NCBI GenBank assembly: GCA_024679065.1
Contig: JAGIQG010000043.1
Span: 1,054,001-1,118,000 of the forward strand
Length of the DNA stretch: 64,000 nt
Source: Sphyrna mokarran
Lineage: Eukaryota
Reading direction: 5' to 3'
A program made the translations under genes and the position numbers. A model generated the notes under the pieces. It did not search any database and was not told the origin of the DNA. It worked only from the letters and a program-made list of their open reading frames with translations. Below, in pieces: positions 8,033-48,687 of the stretch (positions are counted from its first letter, which is position 1; each line of letters starts with the position of its first letter).

Positions 8033-8338
8033 CTTTCTGAGATGAGACACTTTTGCTGAAAATACTTTCTTCGGGGTTGATCTGAAGGGCGCAAGTGCAG
8101 CGAGCGCCGCTTCTCCAAGTTTCCGCCGGGGGACTGATGTAACTGCTGAAGGTGTAGGTGCCGTCCGGTTCTATTGCCCCCGAATCGGTCAGTCCCGTGG
8201 TATCCCGCCCAGAAACATCCCAGCGGACGGAAATGGAATCAGGGGACAATCCTCTGATCAAACACAGCAACGGGACCCTTTCCATGACGGGAATCTGATG
8301 CTGTGGCGGGGTGAGGAGGGTTACGGTGGGAGAATCCA
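8033..8338 (-). CDS. VJ-C1 gene copy A: Ig C1-set domain exon
   Basis: VDSPTVTLL..VPLLCLIRGLSPDSISVRW..DGTYTFSSYI..W..CTC; acceptor aatacag, donor AAAG|gtagc, 306 nt, phase 1-1. Confidence 0.9.
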
Positions 8339-8439
8339 CTGTATTCGGCAAAACAGAGAGAGCCCATTAACAGATAGACCAGGACGCGTTTCAATTGCGA
8401 TTGAAATGTTTACTTCAAGGGAAGAGTGACAAAAATTAC

Positions 8440-8778
8440 CTCTAATTATTAACTTGGATCCATTTCCGAATACCAGTGGTCCCTTTTTCAGATGGCGGAT
8501 TGCACAGTAATACACCCCAGAATCATTTCTCCGCGTATCTGTAATCAGCAGTGAATACACAGCCACTGTTTCAGAATTCATTGTTGACAAGGCTTGGTTT
8601 TCCTCGACGTACTTGTCATGAATGGGAACCAATTTTATTTTGTTTCGCTGCGATTGCGTATACCAATAGACTCCAGTAGCTCCTGACTCCCGGACATAGC
8701 AGTTCAGCTTAACAGGGCGCCCCTCATGAAGTGTCTCAACCGATGGAGACTGGGACAAGATAGAATGAGATAATATGA
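8440..8778 (-). CDS. VJ-C1 gene copy A: V-set domain exon with germline-joined J (FGNGSKLII)
   Basis: SQSP..KLNC..VYWYTQ..YSLLI..DSGVYYC..FGNG in one 339-nt phase 1-1 exon; acceptor ccttctcag, donor AGAG|gtaat. Confidence 0.92.
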
Positions 8779-9224: not shown

Positions 9225-9558
9225 TCTGGACTATCTGATGGGAAACACGACAGCTCAGTGACTATGTCTCTGCTGTGTAGATACATGGATTTGGGCCTGT
9301 GTCTGTGGGAGTTTGCGCATTCTCCCCGTACTTGCGTGGGTTTTCTCCGGGCGCTCCGGTTTCCTCCCACATCCCAAAGATGTGCTCTGAGGCTAATTGG
9401 CAAAACAAATTCTCCCTAAATTGTATTAAATTTGGTTTTTAATCCATAGATCTATAAACATGGACAGGGATCGTGTGTAGAAGTGGGAACATCGAGGTGG
9501 TGGCGCGGGTCGTTGGGCCGAAGGGCTTGTTTCCCGTGTTGTTTTGTTCTTTGTTCAA
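9225..9558 (+). mobile_element. V-domain-containing retroposon 3' fragment in intron 1 (mirror 62785-63118, minus)
   Basis: GGAGTTTGC..TTCTCCCCGT..GCGTGGGTTT..CTCCGGTTTCCTCCCACA core followed by a GGGCCGAAGGGC..(TTGTTCT)n tail. Confidence 0.75.
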
Positions 9559-9869
9559 TTGGTCACTCTCCCTCTTCTTTCCCATAATATCACAACTAAT
9601 CTTGGTCCCTTGATTCATTTCACCAATCCCCCAATTTTTAAAGTTTCTATTGAATCTGCTTTCACCACCTTTCAGAAAGGACGTCCAGATGATAACAACT
9701 CAATGCATTAAAGAAAAATGCGTTCAGTACCCCCTCCTTACAATTATCGATCATCTTCCATATTTTTTTCCTATGGTTATTAACTAAACTTGAATTGGAA
9801 ACTGTTCACTGTTAATGAGCAAATTTAAATTCTTCTCCACTCTATCTGAATATAATGAGGATATCTCAC

Positions 9870-9912
9870 CTTGGAACAGATGGAACAATGCGCAGATGCC
9901 GAGGAAACTCAT
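9870..9912 (-). CDS. VJ-C1 gene copy A: leader exon (MSFLGICALFHLFQ)
   Basis: ATG in a gcaATG context, hydrophobic peptide, 43-nt phase-1 exon ending CAAG|gtgag; splices in frame to the V exon. Confidence 0.8.
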
Positions 9913-9999
9913 TGCCCTTGACCCAAACGGCGAGACTCTGAGTCCCCGGTCCGAATCTCACTGAAAACTCGCTCTTTTTCTCTCTGCGTGAGGGAGTGT

Positions 10000-14014: not shown

Positions 14015-17000
14015 AAAGAACAACAAAGAACAAAGAGCAACACAGCACGGGAAACAGGCCCTTCGGCCCAACGAGCCCGCGCCGCCGTCCTAACGTCTTA
14101 ATGACATATCCATGACTTTAGCTATGCCTATTGTGGAACATTCCCATATAGGGACCAATATACGGACAATTTGTTACCCAATCAGCGTAAGAGCACATTT
14201 TTGGGATGTGGGAGGAAACCGGAGCACCCAGAGAAAACCCACGCGACCACGGGGAGAACGCGCAAACTCCTGCAGACACAGGCCCAAATCCATGTATCTG
14301 TACAGCAACAGCGATAGTCTCTGAGCTGTCATGTTGCCCATCAGATGGTCCAGTTTAAGCATACACTAACGACTTGAAGCACTAGGCCACTCCTGAAGTA
14401 ACATCCAAGAGCAGCCCTCGCACGACCTGCCGTATGCTTGCACCTTGTTGGTCAACAAGGTGGACCGAATTGCCTGTGGAATCAAATAAGATATTTAGAC
14501 AGTCCTGCTATATCCCTCTATCTGCAGAACGCTCATGTGGCTGTCCAAGAGACCCTTAAACAACCCTAGCGTGCCTGCTCCCACCACCTTACTCGGCAGT
14601 GCATTCCACACCCCCACTACCCTTTGTGAGAAAAACTGCCCTCTAATATTCGTCTTATACATAGCCCCCCTCACCCTAAGGCCATGACCCCTTGTTCTAT
14701 CCATTTCTAATGGTGGAAAAAGCTTACCACCATTTACTCTATCTATACCCCTTATAATCTTATATACCTCTAATAGATCCCCTCACAGCCGACGTCTTTC
14801 AAGGGAAAACAACCCCAGTGTGTTCAATCTTTCCTCGTAAGACAGCCCTTCCATACCAGGCAGCATCCTGGTAAATCTCTTCTGCACTCACTCCAAGGCC
14901 TCCACGTCCTTCCGGTAGTACGGCGACCAGAACTGGACGCAGTACTCCAAGTGAGGCCTAACCAACGTTCTATACACTTGCAACATCACACTCCTACTCT
15001 TGTATTCTATACCCCTTCCTATGAAGGCTAACATACCATACGCTATCTTTATCACATTCTCCACCTGTACTGACACCTTCAGAGACTTCTGAACCTGCAC
15101 CCCCAGGTCTCTCTGCGTCTCTATACTCCGGATAGTTTTACATTTTATCCTATAACTCCCCTCTACATTATTCCTGCCAAAATGCATCAGCTCACATTTA
15201 TTCGGATTAAATTCCATTTGTCATCTATCTGCCCAATCTACCAGCCTATCTATGTCCTGTTGTATTGTCTGGCACTGCTCCTCAGTACCCGCCAATCCAA
15301 GCATCTTAGTGTCATCAGCAAATTTGCTGATCACAACACCTACCCCCTCTTCCAAGTCATTTATGTAAACCACAAATAGAATAGGTCCTCGTACTGAGCC
15401 CTGTGGCACATCACTAGTGACTGACCTCCAGTTGGAAAAATAGCCTTCCACTACTACACGCTGTCTCCTCCTCCCAAGCCAGTTCTCAACTCACCTACAT
15501 ACCTAGCCCTGTATCCCATGCGCCTTAATCTTTTCTATCAGCCTACCATGAGGAACCTTGTCAAACGCTTCATTTACTGAAATCCATGTAGACGACATCA
15601 ACGGCTTGTCGTTTTTGTCACCTCTTCAAAAAATTCCACTAGATTCGTAAGGCACGACCTCCCCTTAACGAAGCCATGCTGCGTATCCCTGATCAGATTG
15701 CAGCGCTGAAGATGCTCATACATCCTGTCCCTGAAGATCCTCTCCATTAGCTTACCTATAACTGAAGTCAAGCTCACCGGCCTATAGTTCCCTGGGTTAT
15801 CCCTCTGTACCGTCGTAATGATTATTTCCTTTAAGGGGTCCTCAAATTTCTCAAAGCCGGAACCAGACATCAGGCCCCTTTCCTGCATGAATACAGACGC
15901 AAAGTATTCATTCAGGATCTCCCCCATTCCCTAAGGTCCAATCTTTCCTCTAACCATCTTTTTGCTCCTTACACAGGAGTAAAATGCCTTAGGATTTTCC
16001 TTAATCCTACCTGCCAAAGCCATTTCGTGGCCCCTTTTTGCCTTTCTGACACCCCTTTAAAGATCCCGTCTACACTCTCTATATTCTTCCAGCGCTGTCT
16101 CTGTCCCCAGTTGCCTAGGTCTAACGTACGCCTCCCGCTTCTTCCTGACTAAGCCCTCAATATCCCTAGTTACCCACGGTTCTCTAATCCTACCTTTCCC
16201 ATCCTTACTCCTTACCGGCACTTGTCTTTCCTGCAAAGATTTTAGTTTTCCCTTGAAAGGCTCCCACATGTACAGCGTCGACCTACCCTCGAACAGCTTA
16301 TCTCAGTCTGTATCCTTAAGATCCTGCCTAATCTGGCTGTGTCTAGCCCTCCCCCAGTTTAACACCCTCCCGTTAAGGAAGGCTTCATCATTTTCCATTA
16401 ATATCCTAAAGCAGACAGAGTTGTGGTCACTATTTGACACATGCTCTCCTACTACAACGTCAACCACCTGCCCTGGCTCATTCCCCAGAACCAAATCCAG
16501 CATAGCCCCCTCTGTAGTCGGGCTATCCACATACTGCTCCAAGGACCCTTCCAAAACACAGTGTACAAATTTCTCCCCGTCCACACCTTCCGCTCTGAGC
16601 ACCTTCCAATCTACCGCAGGGAAATTGAAATCTCCCCCTACAACCAGCCTATTCTTCCTACACTTATCTAAAATGTCCCTGCATATCCCTTCTTCCACGG
16701 CCCGCGGGCTGTTGGACGGTCTGTAGTACACACCCAACATAGCAACCACTCCCTTCCTATTCCTCAACTCCACCCATAGCGACTCAATTCCTAAATCATC
16801 CATACCACCCTCCCTCTGCACTGCTATGATGTGATCCTTAACTAATAACGCCACTCCCCCTTCTCTCTTCAAACCACCTCTGTCATGCCTAAAACACTTA
16901 TAGCTTGGAATATTCAATTGCCAGTCCTGCCCCTCCTTTAATCACGTCTCAGTCACCGCCACCACTTCTAACTTCCTCGTGAACATTATTACCTTCAGTT

Positions 17001-22385: not shown

Positions 22386-25300
22386 ATTCAGATAGCTTGA
22401 ATGTTCTTGTGCAGTCCAGAGGTTTATCAGAAGGTATTCAAGCAGTTTGGAAATCCATTATACGGTTCGTATTTATTGTAATGTTGGGTGTACTTCTTGA
22501 GATCGAAGAGCAAGAAATCCATGTTGCAAACAAACCGCAAGTCACTGAGATTATGCCAAGAATGCTGAGTGCCGTTTAGTTGTCTTTAACTGAGGAAAGC
22601 TGCGTTTGCATTTCAGGTAAGATTTCGATTGTTTGATTTCTGGCAGAAAAAAAGGCTTGTCCGATCTGGAGAGAGGCCTTAGAATGGATCGACATTAGTT
22701 GCAGTTCAGAAGAGTATTGTTATTAAATGATAAAATTCAAGCTGGGATCTCAGGAATAAGATTCAGAACTTGTTTGTGCCTCGCTGCGGAGTCTTGAACA
22801 GCGCGGTCATAGTCTCAAGATAAAGACTGAAATTAGCGGACAGTTCTTCATTCATAGATCTGCGAGCATTTGAGATGTTCTGCTCCAGGGAATTTTGGTT
22901 GTTCAATCGTCGGGAACATTGAAGGCAGAAATTCGCGTTCGCGAGGAATCAAGTCAATATGAAGTTAATGTCGAGTCAGATTTTAGTTGTCTGATGGAGA
23001 AGAACGTAAGTCTTTATTTAACATAATTCAGTATGTTAAACTCACGTGATTGTTACAATTCCTCGCCCTGACCACACAGTGCCGCTTGAAAATGCCTTGC
23101 CTGAGTCAGTTGTAGATGCGCCAAGTTTGGTGGCGTTTAAGAGGTTAGTAGATAATTTTATGGATGAAAAGGGAATGGATTAGTTTAGAGGGTCACTGCT
23201 TGTTCCTAATTGGTTGGCGCAACATCGAGGGCCGAAGGGCCTGTTCTGCACTGTAATGTTCTATGTTCTATGAACATGCCCATGCATTTCTCTATTATTC
23301 AGTCCTCCCGAAGGGAATTATTGCCTATTCCCTTTTCGTTTCTCCTTTTCCCTTACCTTGTCAAACACTCGACACTTTCCCATGCATAGAGTTGTGTCCA
23401 CCATTGATTCATGATGACAAGTCATTTATTTAAATCAAAAAGCCAAAAGAAGGCATGCTCAGAATGGAAAGGGGGTGGAAATTCTTATTGGTGAGGGTTC
23501 TTCACGAGTCTGATCCTGATGCAGTTCTTTGCTGGATGATGAAAATTGTGGAAACAAATGCCGCCATTGACTATCTAATTGAGAAAATGTCTGGCTGATG
23601 TCCAAAATATGGTTGGCACCAGTATTTGGTTTTGCATAGGAGAGCACAGAGTTATTAAAAAAGAGCAAACAACAAAGCAGCATGGGAAACAGGCCCTCCG
23701 AGCCAAAGAGTCCGCGCTGCCACCTCGACGTTCTCACTTCCACCCATGATCCTTGTCTATGTTTATAGAAACCTGCATTGGTATAACAATCTGCTTTGGA
23801 ACCAAATCTGTGAGACAATTCAGGGAGAATTTCTTCTGCCAATCAGCCTAAGAGCACGTCTTTGGGATGTGGGAGGAAACCGAAGCACCCGAAGAAAACC
23901 CACGTTAGCATGGGGGGGAATGTGCAAACTCCCACAGACACAGTGCCAATTCCATGTATCTGCAGAACACAGTGAGAGTCACTGAGCTGTCGTGTTGCCC
24001 ATGAACTAGTCCAGTTCCAGCCTACAGTAACGACGGGAAGTGCTAGGATACGATCGAAAAATCCAAGAGCAGCCCTCTCACGATCCATCGCGTGCATGCC
24101 CCTTGTTGGACACCAAGGTGGACCGAAATACCTGTAGGATAAAACAGAAAAAGATCAATATCATTCATAATGTGCTCCATTCTCAGGGAACTCTTAAGGC
24201 TCATGATCCCTATTTTAAATCAGTCTTCTACATCCGTCCATCCCCATTCTGTACTGTGCCCATCGAAGTATTTCAAAACTAACTCCAGCGTGCCTGCCTC
24301 CACCATCTTACTTGGCAGTGTCTTCCATACACCCACAACCCTCTGTGTGAAAAAAAAAAACTCTCTATAGCATCCGAATTATATCTTACCCCTCTCACCC
24401 TACGGCCGTGAACCCTCGTTATATTTGATTCCAACATAGGAAAACGCTTACCACTGTTTATTCTATCTGTACGCCTCATTATCGTGTACACCTCTTTTGG
24501 ATCTCCTGGCAATCTTTCGAAAAAAAATCAGCCCCAATTTGCCGACCCTCTCCTTGCAACACAGTCCTTCAATGCTATGCAGCATCCTGGTAAACCTCCT
24601 CTGCACTCTCTCTAGAGTGTCCACGTCCTTCTAGTAGTAAGATGACGAGAACTGGTTGCAATATTCCAAATGAGATCGAACCAAAATTCTATACACTTGC
24701 AACATTAAAGACCAGCTCTTGTACTCTAAATCACTTCCTATAAAGGTGAGCATATCATATGCTTTCTTCAGAACCTTCTCCACCTGCTCTGCCACCTTCA
24801 GAGACTTGTGCACCTGCACCCCCATGTCCCTCTGCGTTTCTATATTCTTAATAAGGCTACTCTTTACCATGTACCTCCGCTCTAGATTCTTTCTCCCAAA
24901 ATGCATCACCTCGCATTTATCAGGATTGAATTCCATCTGCCATCTATCTCCCAAGCTACCAGCCTATCTATATCCTGCTGTATCACCTGACAATGCTCCT
25001 CACAATCCGCAAGTCCAGCCATCTTTGTATCGTCTGCAAACTTGCTGATCACTCCACTTACTCCCTCTTCCAAGTCATTTATATATATTACAAATAGAAG
25101 TACCGAGAAATATGGTACTGAGCCCTGTAGCACAACACTAGTGACCGGCCTCTAGCTAAGAAAAAAAAACCCTTCCACTATTACTCTTTGTCTCCTATTA
25201 CCTAGCCAGTTACTTATCTATCTAGATACCTTTCTTTGTGTTCCATTAGCCTTGACCTTTTTAACTAACCTCCTATGAGGGACTTTGACCTTGCTGAAAT

Positions 25301-25929
25301 CCATGCAGACGATATAAATGGGTCGCCCTTCATCGGCGTTTTTGTCACCTCCTCAGAAAATTCTACCAGATTCGTAAGGCACGACCTCCCATGAACAAAG
25401 CCATGCTGCCTATCCCTAATCAGATCGCAAAACTCTACCTTATTTCTAAGAATCCCCTGAATCAGCTTCCCTACCACTCACGTCAAATTCACTGGCCTAT
25501 TTGAATACATTCGCATGAGTGCCTTTTCCGAGTCTTTACGTCGCTCGTCGACGTTTTTGTCTACCACTAGCAGATCCCACGCCTTGGGCTCTTGATCTTA
25601 AAGTACCACGGGTAGCACCCCAGCCGGGGTCTACTGAAGTTACCAATTGTTGCCTGCAGACCCCAGCCGGGGTCTGCCCAGGGCATATTTCGTGGCTCGC
25701 AGAGCTCCAGCCGGGGTCTACTGATGTCATTGTGGCTCGGTTGGGCACCCTGAGTGTGTTTAGGGCAGGGTGTGAGCTGGTACCGTCGCCCCCTGATCTA
25801 ATTGGGCGTTTAGAGAACCTTTGTCGGTATTTTCGGTGCTCGGTCCTCTTGCGTGAGGTGGGAAATTTAGAATTTAAGGGAAAATTTTATTCCGAATTCA
25901 GGGAAGCCAGATTAGGTGACGTGACAATT

Positions 25930-26120
25930 GTTCATAACCAATTAACCTAGTTAGCACATTTTTGGCCATGTGGGAGGAAACCGGAGTACCCAGGGAAAAC
26001 CCACGCGAACACGGGGAGAAAGTGCAAACTCCCCCAGCCGCAAGGCCCAGGTCGGGAACCGACCCTGGGTCCAAGTAGCCGGTCAACCTCAGTGCTAATC
26101 ACTGGGCTGACGTGCTGCCC
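25930..26120 (-). mobile_element. V-SINE (HE1-like) head and V-domain embedded in the R2-related element
   Basis: GGGCAGCACG..CAGTGATTAGCACTG..GGACCCAGGGTCGGTTCCCG..GGAGTTTGCACTTTCTCCCCGTG..CTCCGGTTTCCTCCCACA. Confidence 0.8.
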
Positions 26121-26431
26121 ATTCGTACCGTGACACCTTTGGGGGGTAATCGGTGTCATTATCTTTCGTCATCGTCTGGTAGTGAACATCCAAGACAAGA
26201 CGGGGCACACGTCCCATCTCAGCGTCACCCCAGGTGCGTCTCGTTCGTCTCACCCTTTGTACCGATGGTGTGGGTAGTGGGTCGCGGTTGCTTCTACTAC
26301 CTAGGCAGGGTGAACCGCATCCGCCAGCGGATCACCAGTGCCCCCGGGCCAAGCCTGAACTTGTCGAGAACCTAGTTTTTTGGAAATTTACCGGGTTTGT
26401 AGGCATAGAAGCGTGTTGGTTATCCTCGGCC

Positions 26432-26634
26432 AGTCAGATTCCGACAGACACTCGCCTGCCAGCAGGAGTGCCTGGATTCCCTGCGGGACCATCGGTAAGG
26501 GATGACTCACTGTGGTCTAGAACAACCAAAAATACCACAGCGACGCAACACACACCATAATCCATTCCAGCTTCACCACTCTAGGATGGCAGTCCTGTGG
26601 TAGTGGTCATGGACCTGGCATGCATCGCCCCCGC
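26432..26634 (-). ncRNA. Degenerate HDV-like ribozyme-shaped unit 3
   Basis: P1 GCGGGG/UCCCGC; hairpins GCGAUGCA/UGCGUCGC and CUGUGGU/ACCACAG; P2 AGUCA/UGACU; P4 AGGCACUC/GAGUGUCU; catalytic core not canonical. Confidence 0.5.
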
Positions 26635-26650
26635 TATTTGTTTCTCGACC

Positions 26651-26799
26651 AGTCACAGAATACCCTCTCTTGTGCCCAAGGAGAAGGTACCAGGTGGCTC
26701 CCGCGGAAGGGATTGACTCGCTGTGGGTAGAAACCAGAAGACCCCACAGTTACGATTGGCCGTTAACGCCTTGTTTCGGCTAACCAATCATACCCCACC
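26651..26799 (-). ncRNA. Degenerate HDV-like ribozyme-shaped unit 2
   Basis: P1 GGUGG/CCACC; hairpins UAUGAUUGG/CCAAUCGUA and CUGUGGG/CCCACAG; P2 AGUCA/UGACU; P3 CCC-UUCCGC-GGG; P4 UACCUUCU/AGAGGGUA. Confidence 0.55.
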
Positions 26800-26862
26800 G
26801 GTCTGTAACCGCAACCTTAAGGGGCATCCAGGCATGCAATTACTCCGCATCGTTTCTGGGAC

Positions 26863-27113
26863 AGCCGCTTTAGCCGCCACCGCGATGGATGTGCGGTGAC
26901 GTTGCCCGGCGGGACCGACGTGGAGGCGCAGCTCGCTGTGCGGCAGAAACGACAAGACCCGCACAGCTAAAGTAACCAAGAAACCTCAAGAGAGTCCCCC
27001 CAAGAGAGTCCTCCTTAAGAGAGTCATAGCTACTCCCGAGGGAATAACTAGAAACCTCAAGAGAGTCCCCCCAAGAGAGTCCTCCTTAATTTTTAAGAGA
27101 GTCATAGTTACTC
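26863..27113 (-). ncRNA. HDV-like (R2-type) self-cleaving ribozyme, core 26863-26933
   Basis: P2 AGCUGC/GCGGCU, P3 GCC/GGU, L3 UCCACGUC, P1 3' strand CCCGCC, GGGCAAC junction, P4 GUCACCGC/GCGGUGGC, J4/2 GGCUAA with the catalytic-C equivalent at 26873. Confidence 0.85.
27013..27113 (-). other. Two 28S rRNA fragments matching the sequence immediately upstream of the R2 insertion site
   Basis: 27113-27093 GAGTAACTATGACTCTCTTAA (21 nt exact) and 27038-27013 CGGGAGTAGCTATGACTCTCTTAAGG (25/26) versus the conserved 28S GGCGGGAGTAACTATGACTCTCTTAAGG^TAGCC. Confidence 0.9.
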
Positions 27114-28769
27114 CAATTTCCAGAGTTACACCTACTACTCTTTTTAAACAAAGGTACAACATTGGCTATTCTCCAGTCTTATCGGATCTCACCTGCGTCC
27201 AAAAAAGAGACAAAAAATTGGGTCAGAGGCCCAGCAATTTCACCTCGTGCCTCCCTAAGCAGCCTGGGATAAATGCCATCAGGTCCTGGAGATTTATCAG
27301 TTTTAATGCTCCCTGGAAGCTCTGATACTTCCTCCCTCGGTATGGATATTGCCTTTAACTTGCCTACAGCTCCCTCGGAGACAGGACCGGTCAACAAGCC
27401 CTCTCCTTCGTGAATACTGACGCAAAGTATTCATTCAGAATCTCTCCCATTCCCTCAGACTCTAAGCATAGTTCCCCTCCTCTGTCCCTAAGTGGACCGA
27501 TATTTCCTCTAACCACTCTTTTATTCCTAACATAGGAGTAAGAAGCCGTTGGATGCCCTTAATCCTATCTGCCAAAACCATTTCATGCCCTCCCTTTTGT
27601 CCTTCTAACTCCCCATCTGAGCTCCCTCCGGCTTTCTCTATATTCCACCAGCGCTCTCTCCGTTCCCAGTTGCTTTGAACTTCATGCAATGTGGCGGCCA
27701 GAATTAAAAACAATGCTACAAATTGGGGCCCATCAAAATTAAAAAACAACTGAAACGACCAGTATCAGGGATGAATCGGGCACGGGCCCCAAATCATTGG
27801 CTACATTTCTAGATCAAAAGTCCAACGAAAACACTACGAGACCACCACTTCCTCCTCATAAGAAATAAACATTAGTCCAGAATCCTGTCTTTACTTTCTT
27901 CTAACATAGTTTCATTTTACACTTTGACATCGGCCCAAAATGTCTCCTGCTAAAAAAAACAGCATCTCAGCAACAATGTGGTACTCCCTCGACATTGCAC
28001 GGATGTAACGACACGGATCAACTGCCAAAGTTTCAAGAACAGAATTGAGAATAAGAAATCCAGATCATGAATCTGTTATGATTTAGACACTCACGAACTG
28101 GAAATAAGTGTAGGCCACTCGGAAATTCGAGTTCTGCCATTCATTTTGATTATGGCTCATGATCCCATTCAATATCCTGATCCTCTCTCCTCCAGCCACC
28201 CCTCACCTCGTCCTCCCACCTCCCTGACCACTGTCACCCACTCACCATATCCCTTGCTTCCTTTACCCCTAAGAAAATGTCTAATTTAATCTTCAAAGTG
28301 GACTCCGAGAAAGGGACTGAAATTGATTTTGGTGCCTCTCACATCCGCCAATTTCCATCACCCCATCTTTCCTGCTTTGCGGTAAGCTGACACGGACCTC
28401 AGTTCTGGAGCTCTATCCCTGAACCGCTCTGCCTTTGAGTCTCTTTAAAATAAATCTTAAACCTGTTTGCCAATATTTATAGCTTAAACGGCCTAATCTA
28501 GGCAGCATCACTGGTCAACCTCTTCTGCAACTTTTCCAAAGCAACTACGTCCTGCCTATACTGCGGCGACCAGAATTGAATGCAATACTCCAAATGCGGC
28601 TTAATCGGAGCTTCATACAGTTGCATTTGCCAGCACTTCCCGAGATGAAGATCAAATCCGGACCCTGAGAACATTAGCTGAATTTCAGGATTAATAATTC
28701 AGGATAATATAACGAGGCCAACGTCTCCTCCTTGATCAGAATAAATATTAGTACAAAGTCTTATCGTTT

Positions 28770-30165
28770 CTCATAACATTTACACACTTTGATTCAAATT
28801 GTTCTGATTCACTTCAGAGTGATGGATCAAGAGGTGTGTGCATACAATTAGCCGATGTTTATAATGTAGATAAATGTGAGTTAGTCCACCTTGGTAGCAA
28901 AAATAGGGAGGCAGTATATTATTTGAATAGGTGTAACTTAACAGAAGTAGATACTCAATGAGACCTTGGTTTCCTCGGGCATCAGTCACAGAAACAAAGT
29001 GCGTAGGTAGAGCGAGAATTAAAGGAGGAAAATGGTATGCTAGCCTTCATAGCGAGGGGATTTAAGTATATGGATAGGGAAGTTTTTCAACAATTGCATT
29101 GGGCGTTGGTACGCCACACCTGGAATATTTTGTGCATTTGTGGTGTCCTTGTCTAAGGAAAGATATAGAGAGCGCAGCGAAAGTTCACCAGGCTGATTCG
29201 TGAGATGGCAGGTCTGTCACATGAAAAAAGAGATAGAACATAAAACATACAACACTACAGCACAAACAGGCCCTTCGCCCCACAAGTTGTGTCGATCATA
29301 ACCATACATATTGTGCCACAGAATTATCTGTAACGCCCAATCCTATTTAATCCATATACTCATCCAGAAGTCTTTTAAAAGGCCCCAGCGAGTTACGCCT
29401 CCACCGCCACCGACGGCAGTCAATTCCAATCACTCACCACCCTCTGCGTAAAAAAAAACCTACCCTGCAACAGCTCTTCTGTACTTGCTGCCCAGCACCT
29501 TAAACCTGTGTCCTCTCATAGTGACCATTACAGCCCTGGGAAATAACCTCCGAGAATCCACTCTTTCCAATGCTCTCAACATTTTAAAAACCTCTATCGG
29601 GTCGCCTTTCAACCTTCGTCTCTCCAGGGAGAAGAGACTGAGCTCCCTCAACCTATCTTCATAAGGCATGCCTCCCAATCCAGACAACATCCTTGTAAAT
29701 CCCCTCTGCACCCTCTCGATAGACTCCACATCCTATATATCATATACGATTATATTCACTGGAATTTGGAAGACTGACAAGGAATCTCATGGAAACGTAT
29801 GAATTTTTTCATCAGTTTGTGATGGTGGATGCAGAAAGCAAGTTTCCGATGGTGGGGGAGTCCAGATCTAGTGTTCATATTTTGAAGGTAAGTGTTCATC
29901 TTTTAGCACTGAGCTAAGGAGACATCTCTTCACTCAGAGAGCCGTGAATATGTAGACTTAACTGCCACAGAAAGTTGTTGACACAAAAACATAGTGTTAT
30001 TTCTAGACGATACTAGGTATATCTCTTGGGAATCCAGAATTTAAGGGATATGGAAGTCAGGCGAGGTCAGGGCATGAATTTGATGATTACCCATGAACAA
30101 AATGAATGATGGAAAAGGTTTGAATGGCTGAATGGCCAACACCTGTTTCTATGCTCAGTGCTACA
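28770..30165. mobile_element. Old plus-strand LINE fragment with an inverted LINE 3' fragment nested at about 29232-29735 (mirror 43790-45186)
   Basis: ERVQRGFTRML..LFSLERRRL motif on the minus strand, flanked by colinear plus-strand LINE remnants. Confidence 0.7.
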
Positions 30166-36961: not shown

Positions 36962-37006
36962 TCTTCTCCATTGAATGTAATCCGATTTGACATAATCTCA
37001 ACCTGC
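36962..37006. other. 45-bp spacer at the palindrome axis
   Basis: Flanked by a perfect stem of about 53 bp (36909-36961 / 37007-37059). Confidence 0.9.
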
Positions 37007-43900: not shown

Positions 43901-46275
43901 TCCATATCCCTTAAATTCTGGATTCCCAAGAGATATACCTAGTATCGTCTAGAAATAACACTATGTTTTTGTGTCAACAACTTTCTGTGGCAGTTAAGTC
44001 TACATATTCACGGCTCTCTGAGTGAAGAGATGTCTCCTTAGCTCAGTGCTAAAAGATGAACACTTACCTTCAAAATATGAACACTAGATCTGGACTCCCC
44101 CACCATCGGAAACTTGCTTTCTGCATCCACCATCACAAACTGATGAAAAAATTCATACGTTTCCATGAGATTCCTTGTCAGTCTTCCAAATTCCAGTGAA
44201 TATAATCGTATATGATATATAGGATGTGGAGTCTATCGAGAGGGTGCAGAGGGGATTTACAAGGATGTTGTCTGGATTGGGAGGCATGCCTTATGAAGAT
44301 AGGTTGAGGGAGCTCAGTCTCTTCTCCCTGGAGAGACGAAGGTTGAAAGGCGACCCGATAGAGGTTTTTAAAATATTGAGAGCATTGGAAAGAGTGGATT
44401 CTCGGAGGTTATTTCCCAGGGCTGTAATGGTCACTATGAGAGGACACAGGTTTAAGGTGCTGGGCAGCAAGTACAGAAGAGCTGTTGCAGGGTAGGTTTT
44501 TTTTTACGCAGAGGGTGGTGAGTGATTGGAATTGACTGCCGTCGGTGGCGGTGGAGGCGTAACTCGCTGGGGCCTTTTAAAAGACTTCTGGATGAGTATA
44601 TGGATTAAATAGGATTGGGCGTTACAGATAATTCTGTGGCACAATATGTATGGTTATGATCGACACAACTTGTGGGGCGAAGGGCCTGTTTGTGCTGTAG
44701 TGTTGTATGTTCTATGTTCTATCTCTTTTTTCATGTGACAGACCTGCCATCTCACGAATCAGCCTGGTGAACTTTCGCTGCGCCTCTCTATATCTTTCCT
44801 TAGACAAGGACACCACAAATGCACAAAATATTCCAGGTGTGGCGTACCAACGCCCAATGCAATTGTTGAAAAACTTCCCTATCCATATACTTAAATCCCC
44901 TCGCTATGAAGGCTAGCATACCATTTTCCTCCTTTAATTCTCGCTCTACCTACGCACTTTGTTTCTGTGACTGATGCCCGAGGAAACCAAGGTCTCATTG
45001 AGTATCTACTTCTGTTAAGTTACACTTATTCAAATAATATACTGCCTCCCTATTTTTGCTACCAAGGTGGACTAACTCACATTTATCTACATTATAAACA
45101 TCGGCTAATTGTATGCACACACCTCTTGATCCATCACTCTGAAGTGAATCAGAACAATTTGAATCAAAGTGTGTAAATGTTATGAGAAACGATAAGACTT
45201 TGTACTAATATTTACTCTGATCAAGGAGGAGACGTTGGCCTCGTTATATTATCCTGAATTATTAATCCTGAAATTCAGCTAATGTTCTCAGGGTCCGGAT
45301 TTGATCTTCATCTCGGGAAGTGCTGGCAAATGCAACTGTATGAAGCTCCGATTAAGCCGCATTTGGAGTATTGCATTCAATTCTGGTCGCCGCAGTATAG
45401 GCAGGACGTAGTTGCTTTGGAAAAGTTGCAGAAGAGGTTGACCAGTGATGCTGCCTAGATTAGGCCGTTTAAGCTATAAATATTGGCAAACAGGTTTAAG
45501 ATTTATTTTAAAGAGACTCAAAGGCAGAGCGGTTCAGGGATAGAGCTCCAGAACTGAGGTCCGTGTCAGCTTACCACAAAGCAGGAAAGATGGGGTGATG
45601 GAAATTGGCGGATGTGAGACGCACCAAAATCAATTTCAGTCCCTTTCTCGGAGTCCACTTTGAAGATTAAATTAGACATTTTCTTAGGGGTAAAGGAAGC
45701 AAGGGATATGGTGAGTGGGTGACAGCGGTCAGGGAGGTGGGAGGACGAGGTGAGGGGTGGCTGGAGGAGAGAGGATCAGGATATTGAATGGGATCATGAG
45801 CCATAATCAAAATGAATGGCAGAACTCGAATTTCCGAGTGGCCTACACTTATTTCCAGTTCGTGAGTGTCTAAATCATAACAGATTTATGATCTGGATTT
45901 CTTATTCTCAATTCTGTTCTTGAAACTTTGGCAGTTGATCCGTGTCGTTACATCCGTGCAATGTCGAGGGAATACCACATTGTGGCTGAGATGCTGTTTT
46001 TTTTAGCAGGAGACATTTTGGGCCGATGTCAAAGTGTAAAATGAAACTATATTAGAAGAAAGTTAAGACAGGATTCTGGACTAATGTTTATTTCTTATGA
46101 GGAGGAAGTGGTGGTCTCGTAGTGTTTTCGTTGGACTTTTGATCTAGAAATGTAGCCAATGATTTGCGGCCCGTGCCCGATTCATCCCTGATACTGGTCG
46201 TTTCAGTTGTTTTTTAACTTTGATGGGCCCCAATTTGTAGCATTGTTTTTAATTCTGGCCGCCACATTGCATGAA

Positions 46276-48687
46276 GTTCAAAGCAACTGGGAACGGAGAG
46301 AGCGCTGGTGGAATATAGAGAAAGCCGGAGGGAGCTCAGATGGGGAGTTAGAAGGACAAAAGGGAGGGCATGAAATGGTTTTGGCAGATAGGATTAAGGG
46401 CATCCAACGGCTTCTTACTCCTATGTTAGGAATAAAAGAGTGGTTAGAGGAAATATCGGTCCACTTAGGGACAGAAGAGGGGAACTATGCTTAGAGTCTG
46501 AGGGAATGGGAGCGATTCTGAATGAATACTTTGCGTCAGTATTCACGAAGGAGAGGGCTTGTTGACCGGTCCTGTCTCCGAGGGAGCTGTAGGCAAGTTA
46601 AAGGCAATATCCATACCGAGGGAGGAAGTATCAGAGCTTCCAGGGAGCATTAAAACTGATAAATCTCCAGGACCTGATGGCATTTATCCCAGGCTGCTTA
46701 GGGAGGCACGAGGTGAAATTGCTGGGCCTCTGACCCAAATTTTTGTCTCTGTTTTGGACGCAGGTGAGATCCGATAAGACTGGAGAATAGCCAATGTTGT
46801 ACCTTTGTTTAAAAAGAGTAGTAGGTGTAACTCTGGAAATTGTAGGCCAGTGAATTTGACGTGAGTGGTAGGGAAGCTGATTCAGGGGATTCTTAGAAAT
46901 AAGGTAGAGTTTTGCGATCTGATTAGGGATAGGCAGCATGGCTTTGTTCATGGGAGGTCGTGCCTTACGAATCTGGTAGAATTTTCTGAGGAGGTGACAA
47001 AAACGCCGATGAAGGGCGACCCATTTATATCGTCTGCATGGATTTCAGCAAGGTCAAAGTCCCTCATAGGAGGTTAGTTAAAAAGGTCAAGGCTAATGGA
47101 ACACAAAGAAAGGTATCTAGATAGATAAGTAACTGGCGTGGTAATAGGAGACAAAGAGTAATAGTGGAAGGGTTTTTTTTTTCTTAGCTAGAGGCCGGTC
47201 ACTAGTGTTGTGCTACAGGGCTCGGTACCATATTTCTCGGTACTTCTATTTGTAATATATATAAATGACTTGGAAGAGGGAGTAAGTGGAGTGATCAGCA
47301 AGTTTGCAGACGATACAAAGATGGCTGGACTTGCGGATTGTGAGGAGCATTGTCAGGTGATACAGCAGGATATAGATAGGCTGGTAGCTTGGGAGATAGA
47401 TGGCAGATGGAATTCAATCCTGATAAATGCGAGGTGATGCATTTTGGGAGAAAGAATCTAGAGCGGAGGTACATGGTAAAGAGTAGCCTTATTAAGAATA
47501 TAGAAACGCAGAGGGACATGGGGGTGCAGGTGCACAAGTCTCTGAAGGTGGCAGAGCAGGTGGAGAAGGTTCTGAAGAAAGCATATGATATGCTCACCTT
47601 TATAGGAAGTGATTTAGAGTACAAGAGCTGGTCTTTAATGTTGCAAGTGTATAGAATTTTGGTTCGATCTCATTTGGAATATTGCAACCAGTTCTCGTCA
47701 TCTTACTACTAGAAGGACGTGGACACTCCAGAGAGAGTGCAGAGGAGGTTTACCAGGATGCTGCATAGCATTGAAGGACTGTGTTGCAAGGAGAGGGTCG
47801 GCAAATTGGGGCTGATTTTTTTTCGAAAGATTGCCAGGAGATCCAAAAGAGGTGTACACGATAATGAGGCGTACAGATAGAATAAACAGTGGTAAGCGTT
47901 TTCCTATGTTGGAATCAAATATAACGAGGGTTCACGGCCGTAGGGTGAGAGGGGTAAGATATAATTCGGATGCTATAGAGAGTTTTTTTTTTCACACAGA
48001 GGGTTGTGGGTGTATGGAAGACACTGCCAAGTAAGATGGTGGAGGCAGGCACGCTGGAGTTAGTTTTGAAATACTTCGATGGGCACAGTACAGAATGGGG
48101 ATGGACGGATGTAGAAGACTGATTTAAAATAGGGATCATGAGCCTTAAGAGTTCCCTGAGAATGGAGCACATTATGAATGATATTGATCTTTTTCTGTTT
48201 TATCCTACAGGTACTTCGGTCCACCTTGGTGTCCAACAAGGGGCATGCACGCGATGGATCGTGAGAGGGCTGCTCTTGGATTTTTCGATCGTATCCTAGC
48301 ACTTCCCGTCGTTACTGTAGGCTGGAACTGGACTAGTTCATGGGCAACACGACAGCTCAGTGACTCTCACTGTGTTCTGCAGATACATGGAATTGGCACT
48401 GTGTCTGTGGGAGTTTGCACATTCCCCACCATGCTAACGTGGGTTTTCTTCGGGTGCTTCGGTTTCCTCCCACATCCCAAAGATGTGCTCTTAGGCTGAT
48501 TGGCAGAAGAAATTCTCCCTGAATTGTCTCACAGATTTGGTTCCAAAGCAGATTGTTATACCAATGCAGGTTTCTATAAACATAGACAAGGATCATGGGT
48601 GGAAGTGAGAACGTCGAGGTGGCAGCGCGGACTCTTTGGCTCGGAGGGCCTGTTTCCCATGCCGCTTTGTTGTTTGCTCTTTTTTAA
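46276..48687 (+). mobile_element. Decayed CR1 LINE, uninterrupted mirror of 23655-27680 (holds the empty target site at 46842/46843)
   Basis: Continuous ..GTAACTCTGGAAATTGTAGGCCAGTG.. (the LINE PGNYRPVSL-like region). Confidence 0.88.

What the first reader, a model, noticed from the sequence alone, without database searches (positions are those of the whole stretch)
25500..27113. Non-autonomous, multi-ribozyme R2-related element inserted outside rDNA
Seen: a clean 1614-bp, GC/CpG-rich insertion in one palindrome arm, with no TSD, no terminal inverted repeats and no credible ORF. On the minus strand it reads: 28S target-upstream sequence twice, an HDV-like ribozyme, two more ribozyme-shaped units, a V-SINE, a repeat/hairpin tail and AAA. 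Known: R2 elements insert at TTAAGG^TAGCC in 28S, are co-transcribed with rRNA, are released by a 5' HDV-like ribozyme that often cuts inside 28S, and usually make no TSD. Short non-autonomous R2 derivatives (SIDEs) are known from insects. Inference: this is a vertebrate non-coding parasite of the R2 machinery whose source copy sits in rDNA and which retrotransposed off-target here. I know of no description of this architecture but cannot search for one.
Basis: partly seen in the sequence, partly recalled or inferred. Interest (0 to 1): 0.95.

Follow-up and report, generated by a model that had tools for sequence, protein, structure and literature searches.

The report
R2-derived non-coding retroelement outside rDNA
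A 1.6-kb non-coding derivative of the ribosomal-DNA-specific retrotransposon R2, still carrying a piece of 28S rRNA and a self-cleaving-ribozyme motif, has landed outside the ribosomal genes at a site that resembles its normal target.

Summary
The insertion is real. It spans 25500-27113 (1614 bp) and sits in one arm of a ~28-kb palindrome. The empty site is in the other arm. There is no TSD, no terminal inverted repeat and no ORF.

On the minus strand it starts with 28S positions -23 to -3, and a second copy of this leader follows. One HDV-like ribozyme core comes next. Its P1 partner is 28S -28 to -23, which this copy lacks. Rfam HDV_ribozyme scores 25 bits with E 0.028 in a targeted search, below the gathering score.

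Two further ~215-nt units are diverged tandem duplicates. They keep the helices but give no HDV match, so "multi-ribozyme" is only partly supported.

A SINE-like module and a strongly structured tail (z -5.4) end in AAA, next to TAG.

The target resembles the R2 site: only 7 of 124,612 window positions score as well.

Best reading (0.6): a SIDE-like derivative, processed from a 28S co-transcript and inserted off-target by R2 machinery.

Unchecked first-reader notes of this scan report other R2 and SIDE-like copies outside rDNA elsewhere in this genome.

Prior art lowers novelty: Drosophila SIDEs, and R1/R2 copies outside rDNA (28S leaders on R1). I rate it a new variant of a known kind.

The parts
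25500..27113 (-). Whole inserted element, 1614 bp; the sense strand is the minus strand
   Evidence: Present in the left palindrome arm and absent from the right arm. GC 0.542 and CpG o/e 0.77, against 0.43 and 0.54-0.59 in the flanks.
27084..27113 (-). 28S leader copy A. 27113-27093 equals 28S -23..-3. Then come 5 extra letters (27092-27088) and AAGG (27087-27084).
   Evidence: Coordinates. Compared by eye with the rDNA oligo printed: 21 of 21 letters match.
27013..27038 (-). 28S leader copy B, equal to 28S -26..-1 with one mismatch (G for A at -18)
   Evidence: (family D2).
26979..27089 (-). Young 71-78-nt duplication of leader plus adjoining sequence. It holds identical 40-mers at 26979-27018 and 27050-27089, and six copies of GACTCTCTT (28S -13..-5) lie between 26988 and 27103.
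   Evidence: D1 100%, D2 95%; period-14 array 26987-27025.
26936..26966 (-). Hairpin H0 of unit 1 (CTGTGCGG / CCGCACAG), lying in the J1/2 region
   Evidence: The helix is kept in all three units, with 2 compensatory pairs.
26863..26933 (-). HDV-like ribozyme core, unit 1. P2 26933-26929 with 26867-26863. P3/L3/P3' 26927-26914 (GCC UCCACGUC GGU). P1 3' strand 26913-26908 (CCCGCC). P1.1 26907-26906 (GG). P4 26900-26876. J4/2 26875-26868 (GGCUAAAG).
   Evidence: Rfam RF00094 matches 26939->26861 at 25.0 bits, E 0.028 in an 86-nt search, against a gathering score of 50. The core pattern is unique in the window, with 0 of 100 shuffles matching (the pattern was derived from this site). Coordinates.
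26647..26749 (-). Unit 2, a diverged duplicate of H0 plus core. P2 AGUCA/UGACU, P3 UCC(C)/(G)GGA, a 9-11-bp P4, and a weak P1.1.
   Evidence: Alignments A2 and A3, pair counts, fold. No HDV match.
26428..26540 (-). Unit 3, a diverged duplicate of H0 plus core. P2 is kept; P3 has 2 of 3 pairs; P1 3' strand is CCCGCA; P1.1 is weak.
   Evidence: No HDV match.
26121..26427 (-). Spacer of unknown origin between unit 3 and the SINE-like module. Its first ~130 nt still align with the spacers of repeats 1 and 2.
   Evidence: No ORF. No Rfam match.
25950..26120 (-). SINE-like module: a tRNA-like head followed by a conserved core. The name 'V domain' is from recall only.
   Evidence: Part of the core (26005-26049) is 82-85% identical to four other window places and aligns with them. 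ARAGORN finds no tRNA. Part of the module was not searchable.
25500..25949 (-). 3' tail. It holds three 43-44-nt repeats (25620-25640, 25663-25683, 25707-25727), each a GACCCC-GGCU-GGGGUC hairpin. The last 261 nt form a long rod. It ends ...UUCAAA.
   Evidence: D3; z -5.39, 0 of 200 shuffles. No similarity to the tails that follow the other two core copies: best E 0.23 over 21 nt.
27114..27138 (-). Upstream target flank that resembles the 28S leader (pseudo-28S half-site)
   Evidence: D2, third copy, 68%; 13 of 22 letters match at offset 2, reached by 0.69% of background positions.
25493..25499 (-). Downstream target flank TAGGCCA, directly after the element's 3' end. The 28S site reads TAGCCA after the nick.
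   Evidence: and the 28S oligo.
46830..46855 (+). Empty (uninterrupted) target site in the other palindrome arm. The junction lies between 46842 and 46843.

Best explanation
This is a non-coding, SIDE-like derivative of an R2 retrotransposon that R2 machinery inserted at a 28S look-alike site outside the rDNA.

Proposed pathway:
- A source copy lay directly downstream of 28S sequence and was transcribed together with it (inferred).
- The unit-1 HDV-like ribozyme pairs its CCCGCC strand with 28S -28..-23 and cuts there, leaving about 28 nt of 28S as a leader on the RNA. The fold is shown; cleavage is inferred.
- An R2 protein supplied in trans bound the structured 3' tail and nicked a site that resembles the 28S target.
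- It primed cDNA synthesis at the nick, where the first three downstream letters (TAG) equal the 28S site. This put the element's 3' end exactly at the nick.
- The 5' end was joined without homology, with 4-5 leader letters lost and no TSD.

In its present place the ribozyme lacks its P1 partner, so this copy should not process itself.

Units 2 and 3 and the doubled leader are successive tandem accretions of the 5' module. The two old units keep their helices but not the catalytic-core signature.
For: - Clean insertion with an empty site and no TSD.
- 28S leader: 21 of 21 and 25 of 26 letters.
- HDV-like core with P2, P3, L3, P1.1, P4 and J4/2 in canonical order. It was the top Rfam hit on the correct strand over the full model (25 bits, E 0.028).
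- CCUCCACGUCGG here, against the most conserved R2 ribozyme string CCUCCUCGUGG quoted in PMC5035012 (passages).
- The P1 3' strand is complementary to 28S -28..-23, the commonest R2 cleavage register (PMC3774820 results section).
- The target resembles the R2 site: 13 of 22 upstream letters plus TAG, matched by 7 of 124,612 positions including the site and its twin.
- A-clade R2 N-terminal domains bind the upstream half-site, and 5' 'join' junctions with partial 28S duplication are described (PMC11204384 passages).
- Avian and testudine R2 proteins need a few template letters that pair with the nicked primer.
- The tail is strongly structured.
- No ORF.
- CpG not yet decayed, and arms 99.53% identical around the site, so the event is young.
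- Weak support for more than one copy or for expression: a 98-million-letter run (kind guessed as RNA) and a 313-million-letter run of another organism label hold 27% and 20% of the sampled words.
Against: - No rDNA-flanked copy was seen and no autonomous R2 could be compared. The 3' tail's R2 identity is therefore untested.
- The Rfam score is half the gathering score, and the 3.7-kb scan at E<=1 was blank.
- MFE z-scores of the three units are ordinary, -1.17 to +0.46.
- Leader copy A has 5 extra letters that true 28S lacks, so the immediate source may not have been a pristine 28S junction.
- The upstream target similarity is one letter out of register, and the test was defined after seeing the site.
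- Downstream similarity beyond TAG is modest: 7 of 12 ungapped, by eye.
- Two protein-database searches with spurious ORFs of the element found no other copy.
Confidence: 0.6

Rival explanations
1. It is a one-off product, not a family. A full-length R2 transcript, co-transcribed with 28S, was copied with an internal template switch or deletion and inserted off-target. This would be a dead-on-arrival R2 copy that never propagated as a non-autonomous element.
For: - All the R2-type evidence above fits equally.
- No second copy exists in the 64-kb window or in two protein-database searches.
- Incomplete extra-rDNA R2 copies are known in Drosophila (PMC2718515 passages).
Against: - The element is longer and more elaborate than a plain 5'+3' fusion. 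It has three old 5' units about 40-45% diverged from each other yet with 48 of 51 helix cells still paired, plus a young leader duplication. That argues for long evolution as a unit or within an R2 5' UTR.
- Small runs hold sizeable shares of its words.
- An unchecked note of this scan reports a 1350-letter SIDE-like copy elsewhere (s1-887047).
Confidence: 0.2
2. It is a chimeric retrocopy moved by another LINE (CR1/L2 type). An R2 5' RNA was fused by template switching to a tRNA-V-type SINE, whose tail is recognised by that LINE's reverse transcriptase. On this view R2 protein played no part in the insertion.
For: - The 3' ~600 nt look like a SINE: a tRNA-like head, a conserved core that recurs in the window, and a structured tail.
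- An APE-type LINE in the window carries the same core in its 3' region.
- Unchecked notes say a CR1 family and R2 share a 3' UTR + SINE module (s1-886675, s1-887730).
- Hybrid SIDEs that pair an R2 ribozyme with another element's 3' end exist (PMC3414825 abstract).
Against: - The tail shows no similarity to the tails after the two other core copies in the window: best E 0.23 over 21 nt.
- The insertion point mimics the R2 nick, with TAG directly after the 3' end and a 28S-like upstream flank.
- No TSD and no terminal microsatellite.
Confidence: 0.09
3. It was captured at the DNA level. A piece of rDNA-resident R2 junction DNA or cDNA was used as filler in double-strand-break repair or moved by ectopic recombination, without target-primed reverse transcription at this site.
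For: No TSD. The 5' end starts inside 28S-derived sequence. The host region is a recombining palindrome.
Against: Both ends are what TPRT by R2 predicts: the 3' end at ^TAG and the 5' end inside the -28 leader. The site resembles the R2 target. There is no deletion or rearrangement of the target.
Confidence: 0.05
4. It is an assembly artefact: a misjoined rDNA/R2 read placed into one arm.
For: Near-identical palindromes are hard to assemble. I could not lay reads.
Against: Base-exact continuity of both flanks with the other arm. A DNA run holds 65% of the sampled words, though it may be the source sample. No 28S sequence lies beyond the 21-26-nt leaders.
Confidence: 0.03

Closest known systems
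R2 SIDEs (Short Internally Deleted Elements) of Drosophila (Eickbush & Eickbush 2012, PMC3414825; abstract and outline read)
   Same: Non-coding. An R2 5' ribozyme is joined to a 3' end presumed to recruit the R2 protein in trans. Propagation is by TPRT.
   Different: The Drosophila SIDEs sit in the 28S R2 site, are simple 5'+3' fusions, and are insect elements. This one lies outside rDNA and, I infer, in a vertebrate. It has a doubled 28S leader, three tandem 5' units and a SINE-like module. Identity of its 3' end with an R2 is untested.
R2/R1 hybrid SIDEs (same paper)
   Same: An R2 ribozyme is fused to foreign 3' sequences. This shows the ribozyme module can be recombined with another element's tail.
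   Different: Those insert at the R1 site with 14-bp TSDs. Here there is no TSD, and the site is R2-like.
R2 ribozymes that cleave at 28S -28 (Eickbush, Burke & Eickbush 2013, PMC3774820; results section read)
   Same: P1 is built from 28S sequence. There is a long J1/2 and a conserved P3/L3/P1.1 core. 28S duplications at 5' junctions match the cleavage site.
   Different: Those are single ribozymes at the 5' end of autonomous elements. Here the module is triplicated, and two of the units have lost the core signature.
R1/R2 copies outside the rDNA in Drosophila (Stage & Eickbush 2009, PMC2718515; passages read)
   Same: Extra-rDNA R2 copies occur in 5 species. Full-length R1 copies outside rDNA carry 7-28 bp of upstream 28S at the 5' junction, so co-transcribed leaders do get carried off-target.
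   Different: Those are insect copies of autonomous elements. No pseudo-target analysis for R2 appears in the passages I saw.
Non-target-specific R2 families R2NS-1_SMed and R2NS-1_CSi (Kojima et al. 2016, PMC5035012; passages read)
   Same: R2-clade elements found outside 28S.
   Different: Those are autonomous flatworm families that lost specificity. The present site still resembles the 28S target, which points to relaxed rather than lost specificity.
tRNA-V type SINEs (V-SINE superfamily; name and features recalled, original paper PMC155270 not held)
   Same: A tRNA-like head and a conserved central core that recurs in unrelated repeats of the window.
   Different: Here the module is internal to a longer element with an R2 5' end. 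Its tail matches no other copy in the window.

Membership tests
Autonomous R2 retrotransposon | Single ORF with zinc finger/Myb, reverse transcriptase and RLE endonuclease | tested here: not met
   Longest sense ORF is 70 aa. Stops in all three sense frames. No credible Pfam family in the 6 ORFs scanned; the only hit, in one ORF, was E 0.13.
Autonomous R2 retrotransposon | Inserted at the TTAAGG^TAGCC site of 28S rDNA | tested here: not met
   The flanks are a non-rDNA repeat-rich palindrome arm. The site only resembles the target.
R2 SIDE | 5' end carries the R2 HDV-like ribozyme | tested here: met
   Unit 1 core at 26933-26863. Rfam HDV_ribozyme 25 bits, E 0.028, below gathering. P1 3' strand is complementary to 28S -28..-23.
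R2 SIDE | 3' end is that of the species' autonomous R2 | not testable with these tools
   No R2 of this genome could be fetched. Only unchecked notes mention R2 copies.
R2 SIDE | Copies reside in the 28S R2 site and show R2-type 5' junction variation | not testable with these tools
The window holds a single copy.
R2 SIDE | No coding capacity | tested here: met
HDV-like self-cleaving ribozyme | Nested double pseudoknot: P1, P1.1, P2, P3, P4 in order, with a C in J4/2 | tested here: met
   For unit 1, P2 (5 bp), P3 (3 bp), P1.1 (2 bp), P4 (8 bp) and J4/2 GGCUAAAG are all present. P1 forms only with 28S -28..-23, which this copy lacks.
HDV-like self-cleaving ribozyme | Reaches the Rfam gathering score | tested here: not met
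   25.0 bits against 50. Units 2 and 3 give no HDV hit at E<=10.
HDV-like self-cleaving ribozyme | Self-cleavage in vitro | not testable with these tools
   A bench assay is needed.
V-SINE (tRNA-V) | tRNA-derived head with pol III boxes | tested here: inconclusive
   ARAGORN finds no tRNA in 26005-26200. The box-like motifs I saw are judged from recall only.
V-SINE (tRNA-V) | Central conserved V domain | tested here: inconclusive
   The core recurs at 82-85% identity at 4 window places, which are 2 independent places plus their twins. No SINE library was on hand, and part of the module was not searchable.
Deltavirus-like agent (considered because of the size, the HDV-like motif and the rod-like fold) | Delta-antigen ORF | tested here: not met
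   No Pfam family in the 6 ORFs. The element starts with a 28S leader and contains a SINE-like module.

The most novel reading that the evidence does not exclude
A vertebrate genome hosts a propagating, R2-dependent non-coding family whose 5' module (28S leader plus ribozyme) has been accreted repeatedly, three old units plus a young leader duplication. The two old units were kept for their fold rather than for catalysis, for example as binding sites for R2 protein or as aids to folding of the active unit. The resident R2 machinery regularly integrates such RNAs and full-length R2s at 28S look-alike sites outside the rDNA. If so, natural pseudo-targets would give a direct read-out of the off-target rules of vertebrate R2 proteins.
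Probability: 0.25. Interest if true: 0.8.

Novelty: new variant of a known kind. Interest (0 to 1): 0.55.

Why it matters
R2 proteins of vertebrates are being developed to write transgenes into human rDNA. What RNA they accept, and where they go when they miss, are practical questions for that work.

This copy offers three things:
- A natural, young off-target event with its empty site preserved in the same window. It shows which parts of the 28S site were mimicked: an upstream half-site look-alike and TAG at the nick.
- A possible first vertebrate counterpart of the insect SIDEs. This would mean R2 can be parasitised in vertebrates too.
- A triplicated 5' module in which helices were kept while sequence diverged, hinting at a role of the R2 5' RNA beyond self-cleavage.

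If it is only a single dead copy, it remains a neat illustration of known R2 biology: a -28 leader, a join-type 5' junction and no TSD.

Tried and rejected
- Rfam scan of 24500-28200 at E<=1 was blank. Only the targeted 86-nt search found HDV_ribozyme.
- A scan of 26960-27130 gave only chance-level miRNA and ToxI rows.
- My first HDV descriptor had no P1 and a loose L3, and was useless: 71 hits on the sense strand, 62 on the antisense strand, and a mean of 53.9 in 200 shuffles.
- A metagenome scan with a degenerate core pattern returned 119 loci. None of the 119 had 28S motifs within 700 nt upstream, so they are chance matches in unrelated contigs.
- Two protein-database searches with spurious ORFs of the element, meant to find other copies, were blank. 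Given the length limits of that tool and unknown coverage of this species, the blanks say little.
- Two findings look-ups by sequence were blank.
- Deltavirus-like agent: rejected, since there is no delta-antigen ORF.
- Hammerhead or other ribozyme families: none in Rfam.
- P1 partners for units 2 and 3: only 5-nt complements upstream (GGUGG, GCGGG), which chance gives easily. Not claimed.
- 28S-like 'pseudo-leaders' in the spacers: weak for spacer 1 (18 of 500 shuffles as good), none for spacer 2 or after unit 3.
- CR1-type tail: no similarity to the two other core-bearing repeats of the window.
- Literature: searches found no vertebrate non-autonomous R2 and no multi-unit R2 5' module. Subscription journals, Repbase/Dfam and supplementary tables were not visible. 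These include the R2 sequence tables of PMC13188248, which may hold the UTRs of cartilaginous-fish R2s.
- The original V-SINE paper is not held.
Full report
**The insertion.** The window holds a palindrome whose arms run from about 8344 to 36980 and from 36980 to 64000. Left-arm blocks 25161-25499 and 27111-29172 pair with right-arm blocks 46843-47181 and 44784-46845. The left arm therefore carries extra DNA. A three-way alignment of the two junctions and the other arm puts the extra DNA at 25500..27113 (1614 bp). The uninterrupted site lies between 46842 and 46843. There is no target-site duplication or deletion; at most one G is ambiguous. None of the four inverted pairs found in 25450-27170 is terminal. 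The element has GC 0.542 and CpG o/e 0.77, against 0.434-0.436 and 0.54-0.59 in the 3-kb flanks. The arms are 99.53% identical over 10,389 aligned columns around it (41 mismatches, 7 gap openings), so the event is young. The arms differ by point changes and by this 1.6-kb indel, so they are two real copies or two haplotypes, not one molecule read twice.

**No coding capacity.** Twenty-six ORFs of at least 30 aa overlap the element. The longest is 143 aa and antisense; the longest sense ORF is 70 aa. All three sense frames are full of stops. Six ORFs were scanned against Pfam at E<=1. Five had no family and one had a chance-level hit at E 0.13. That also removes a deltavirus-like reading, which I had considered because of the size, the HDV-like motif and the rod-like tail.

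**The 5' end.** On the minus strand the element begins GAGTAACTATGACTCTCTTAA (27113-27093). Read by eye against the 84-nt rDNA target oligo printed in the methods of bioRxiv 10.1101/2024.11.11.623112, this is 28S -23..-3, 21 of 21 letters. The same string appears among the 28S junction sequences in the Figure 5 legend of PMC3774820. The flanking G could be -24. Five extra letters and AAGG follow. A second leader at 27038-27013 equals 28S -26..-1 with one mismatch. The two leaders belong to a 71-78-nt duplication with identical 40-mers. Six copies of GACTCTCTT (28S -13..-5) lie between 26988 and 27103. PMC3774820 describes tandem or stuttered duplications of upstream 28S sequence at 5' junctions for R2s whose ribozyme cuts upstream in 28S.

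**Ribozyme unit 1.** At 26933-26863 the sense strand reads, in order:
- P2 5' strand AGCUG;
- P3 GCC, L3 UCCACGUC, P3' GGU;
- CCCGCC, then GG, then GCAAC;
- an 8-bp hairpin;
- GGCUAAAG;
- P2 3' strand CGGCU.

This is the canonical order of an HDV-like ribozyme. CCCGCC is the complement of 28S -28..-23 (GGCGGG in the oligo). P1 therefore forms only with 28S sequence. The predicted cleavage site is -28, the commonest register among R2 ribozymes and the one assigned to zebra finch (PMC3774820). The string CCUCCACGUCGG differs by one substitution and one extra letter from CCUCCUCGUGG, which PMC5035012 calls the most conserved R2 ribozyme sequence.

A targeted Rfam search of 26855-26940 gave HDV_ribozyme as the top hit. 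It lies on the minus strand and covers the full model, at 25.0 bits and E 0.028. The score is below the gathering score of 50. The earlier 3.7-kb scan at E<=1 was blank. The low score is expected because the true P1 5' strand lies more than 150 nt away, or is absent.

In this copy P1 cannot form. Leader B offers 4 pairs and leader A fewer. This agrees with the scan's note s1-887584.

**Units 2 and 3.** Three tandem repeats of about 215 nt start at 26966, 26749 and 26540. They align over their whole length with 65-69% mean column identity. On the three-unit alignment I counted a structure made of hairpin H0 (7 pairs), P2 (5), P3 (3) and P1.1 (2). The results:
- 48 of 51 cells form standard pairs (94.1%).
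- 5 of 17 pairs show changes on both sides.
- Slid controls pair at 32.7-43.1%.
- 13 of 500 column shuffles reach the observed pairing.
- 9 of 500 reach the number of compensatory pairs.

There are caveats. The sample is only three sequences, and I derived the structure from them. MFE folds recover H0, P2 and P4 in each unit, but their z-scores are ordinary, -1.17 to +0.46. P1.1 is weak in units 2 and 3, with 1 of 2 pairs and that one a G-U pair. P3 of unit 3 has 2 of 3 pairs. Searches of the same size as the one that found unit 1 gave no HDV-family hit at E<=10. Possible P1 partners are only 5-nt complements. My conclusion is that units 2 and 3 are old duplicates of the leader-ribozyme module. 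They keep the scaffold but not a recognisable catalytic core. 'Ribozyme-shaped' is fair; 'multi-ribozyme' is not shown. A weak 28S-leader look-alike lies in the spacer before unit 2 (18 of 500 shuffles as good). No such look-alike lies before unit 3 or after it.

**Middle and 3' part.** The stretch 26427-26121 has no match to anything I could search. From about 26120 a tRNA-like head is followed by a conserved core. ARAGORN calls no tRNA there. It found only four hits in the rest of the window, all to 26005-26049 (39-45 nt, 82-85%). These are two independent places and their palindrome twins. One of them lies about 2 kb 3' of an APE-type LINE endonuclease ORF. Calling the core a 'V domain' rests on my recall, because no SINE library was on hand and part of the module could not be sent to search tools.

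The tail (25949-25500) has three 43-44-nt repeats. Its last 261 nt fold into a long rod at -110 kcal/mol, against -82.1 +/- 5.2 for shuffles (z -5.39, 0 of 200 shuffles as good). It ends UUCAAA. The tail has no similarity to the sequences that follow the other two core copies (best E 0.23 over 21 nt), while those two share a 59-nt piece at 90%.

**The target.** In sense orientation the empty site reads ...GTAGTAGGTGTAACTCTGGAAATTG^TAGGCCAGTGAA. The 28S site reads ...GGGAGTAACTATGACTCTCTTAAGG^TAGCCAAATGCC. The first three letters after the nick are identical. The 22 letters ending 2 nt before the nick match the element's own leader at 13 of 22. Taking the best of six offsets, 0.69% of 124,612 positions on both strands of the element-free window reach this score. 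Together with TAG after the nick, only 7 of 124,612 do, and those 7 include the site itself and its twin in the other arm. I defined this test after seeing the site, and the match is one letter out of register, so it is supportive rather than decisive. It agrees with note s1-887655.

The similarity fits what is known of vertebrate R2 proteins:
- A-clade R2 N-terminal domains bind only the upstream half-site (PMC11204384 passages).
- Avian and testudine R2 proteins need a few template letters that pair with the nicked primer.

**Mechanism.** Shown:
- the insertion and its empty site;
- the 28S leader;
- the HDV-like fold that needs 28S for P1;
- the structured tail;
- the 28S-like target;
- the absence of an ORF and of a TSD.

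Inferred:
- a source copy directly downstream of 28S sequence, co-transcribed with it;
- self-cleavage at -28;
- recognition of the tail by an R2 protein supplied in trans;
- a nick at the pseudo-site, with priming helped by the UAG shared by template read-through and target;
- a join-type 5' junction with loss of 4-5 leader letters.

The five extra letters in leader A are unexplained. They may come from the source's own 5' junction.

**Other evidence.** The run index lists five runs:
- a DNA run of organism A with 65% of the sampled words, possibly the source sample;
- a 98-million-letter run of organism A, with kind guessed as RNA, holding 27%;
- a 313-million-letter DNA run of organism B holding 20%;
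- a metatranscriptome holding 13%;
- a run of organism C holding 5%.

Such shares in small runs suggest that parts of the element are multi-copy or expressed.

Unchecked first-reader notes of this scan report, elsewhere in the same genome:
- near full-length R2 copies outside rDNA with 28S relics (s1-887037, s1-886609, s1-887775);
- a 1350-letter SIDE-like element (s1-887047);
- a 3' UTR + SINE module shared by R2 and a CR1 family (s1-887730, s1-886675).

If these hold, the 3' half here is the R2 3' UTR and the family reading gains support. I could not test them.

**Comparison with what is known.** The element works like the Drosophila R2 SIDEs (PMC3414825). I do not file it as a member, because two defining features, a 3' end shared with the autonomous R2 and residence in the 28S site, could not be tested or are not met by this copy. 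Copies of rDNA-specific elements outside the rDNA are in print for Drosophila, with upstream 28S at the 5' junction reported for R1 (PMC2718515). R2 families without target specificity are known from flatworms (PMC5035012). R2 itself is reported from cartilaginous fishes, amphibians and reptiles (PMC13188248). Five full-text searches found no non-autonomous R2 in a vertebrate and no tandemly multiplied R2 5' module. Subscription journals, repeat databases and supplementary tables were not visible. I rate it a new variant of a known kind, with interest 0.55.

**Limits.** I infer a vertebrate, probably a cartilaginous fish, only from the neighbouring Ig-type gene and the repeat content. This was not tested.

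Noticed in passing
window 8344-64000: Large palindrome with an identity gradient. Outer arm blocks are 100% identical (12,789 nt and 2,486 nt). Identity is about 99.5% around 20-32 kb, and only 92-98% in the ~3.5 kb next to the centre near 36980. It may be a true inverted duplication or two haplotypes joined head to head.
   Followed up: partly
window 16303-16917 (-) and 14180-14300 (-): ORF with an APE-type LINE endonuclease domain (Pfam Exo_endo_phos_2, E 2e-11). About 2 kb 3' of it lies a copy of the same conserved SINE-type core as in the element. The core therefore also sits in a LINE 3' region.
   Followed up: partly
window 9280-9400 (+) and 9380-9980: Second copy of the conserved core. 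Its downstream sequence shares a 59-nt piece (90%) with the copy at 14180, but nothing with the R2-derived element's tail.
   Followed up: partly
window 8321-8758 (-): ORF with an immunoglobulin V-set domain (Pfam E 8e-13). It lies within the antigen-receptor-like gene noted by the scan (s1-887617).
   Followed up: no
window 27088-27092 (-): Leader copy A has 5 extra letters inside the TTAAGG motif that copy B and the printed 28S target lack. This is unexplained, and may be a relic of the source copy's own 5' junction.
   Followed up: no
window 26800-26848 (-): The spacer between units 1 and 2 contains a weak look-alike of the 28S leader (GGAGTAA...CCTTAAGG), with 18 of 500 shuffles scoring as well. 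If real, each old unit was once a leader-plus-ribozyme module.
   Followed up: partly
sequencing runs X2, X3: Very small runs (98 and 313 million letters) hold 27% and 20% of the element's sampled words. This suggests multi-copy or expressed parts, in two organism labels.
   Followed up: no
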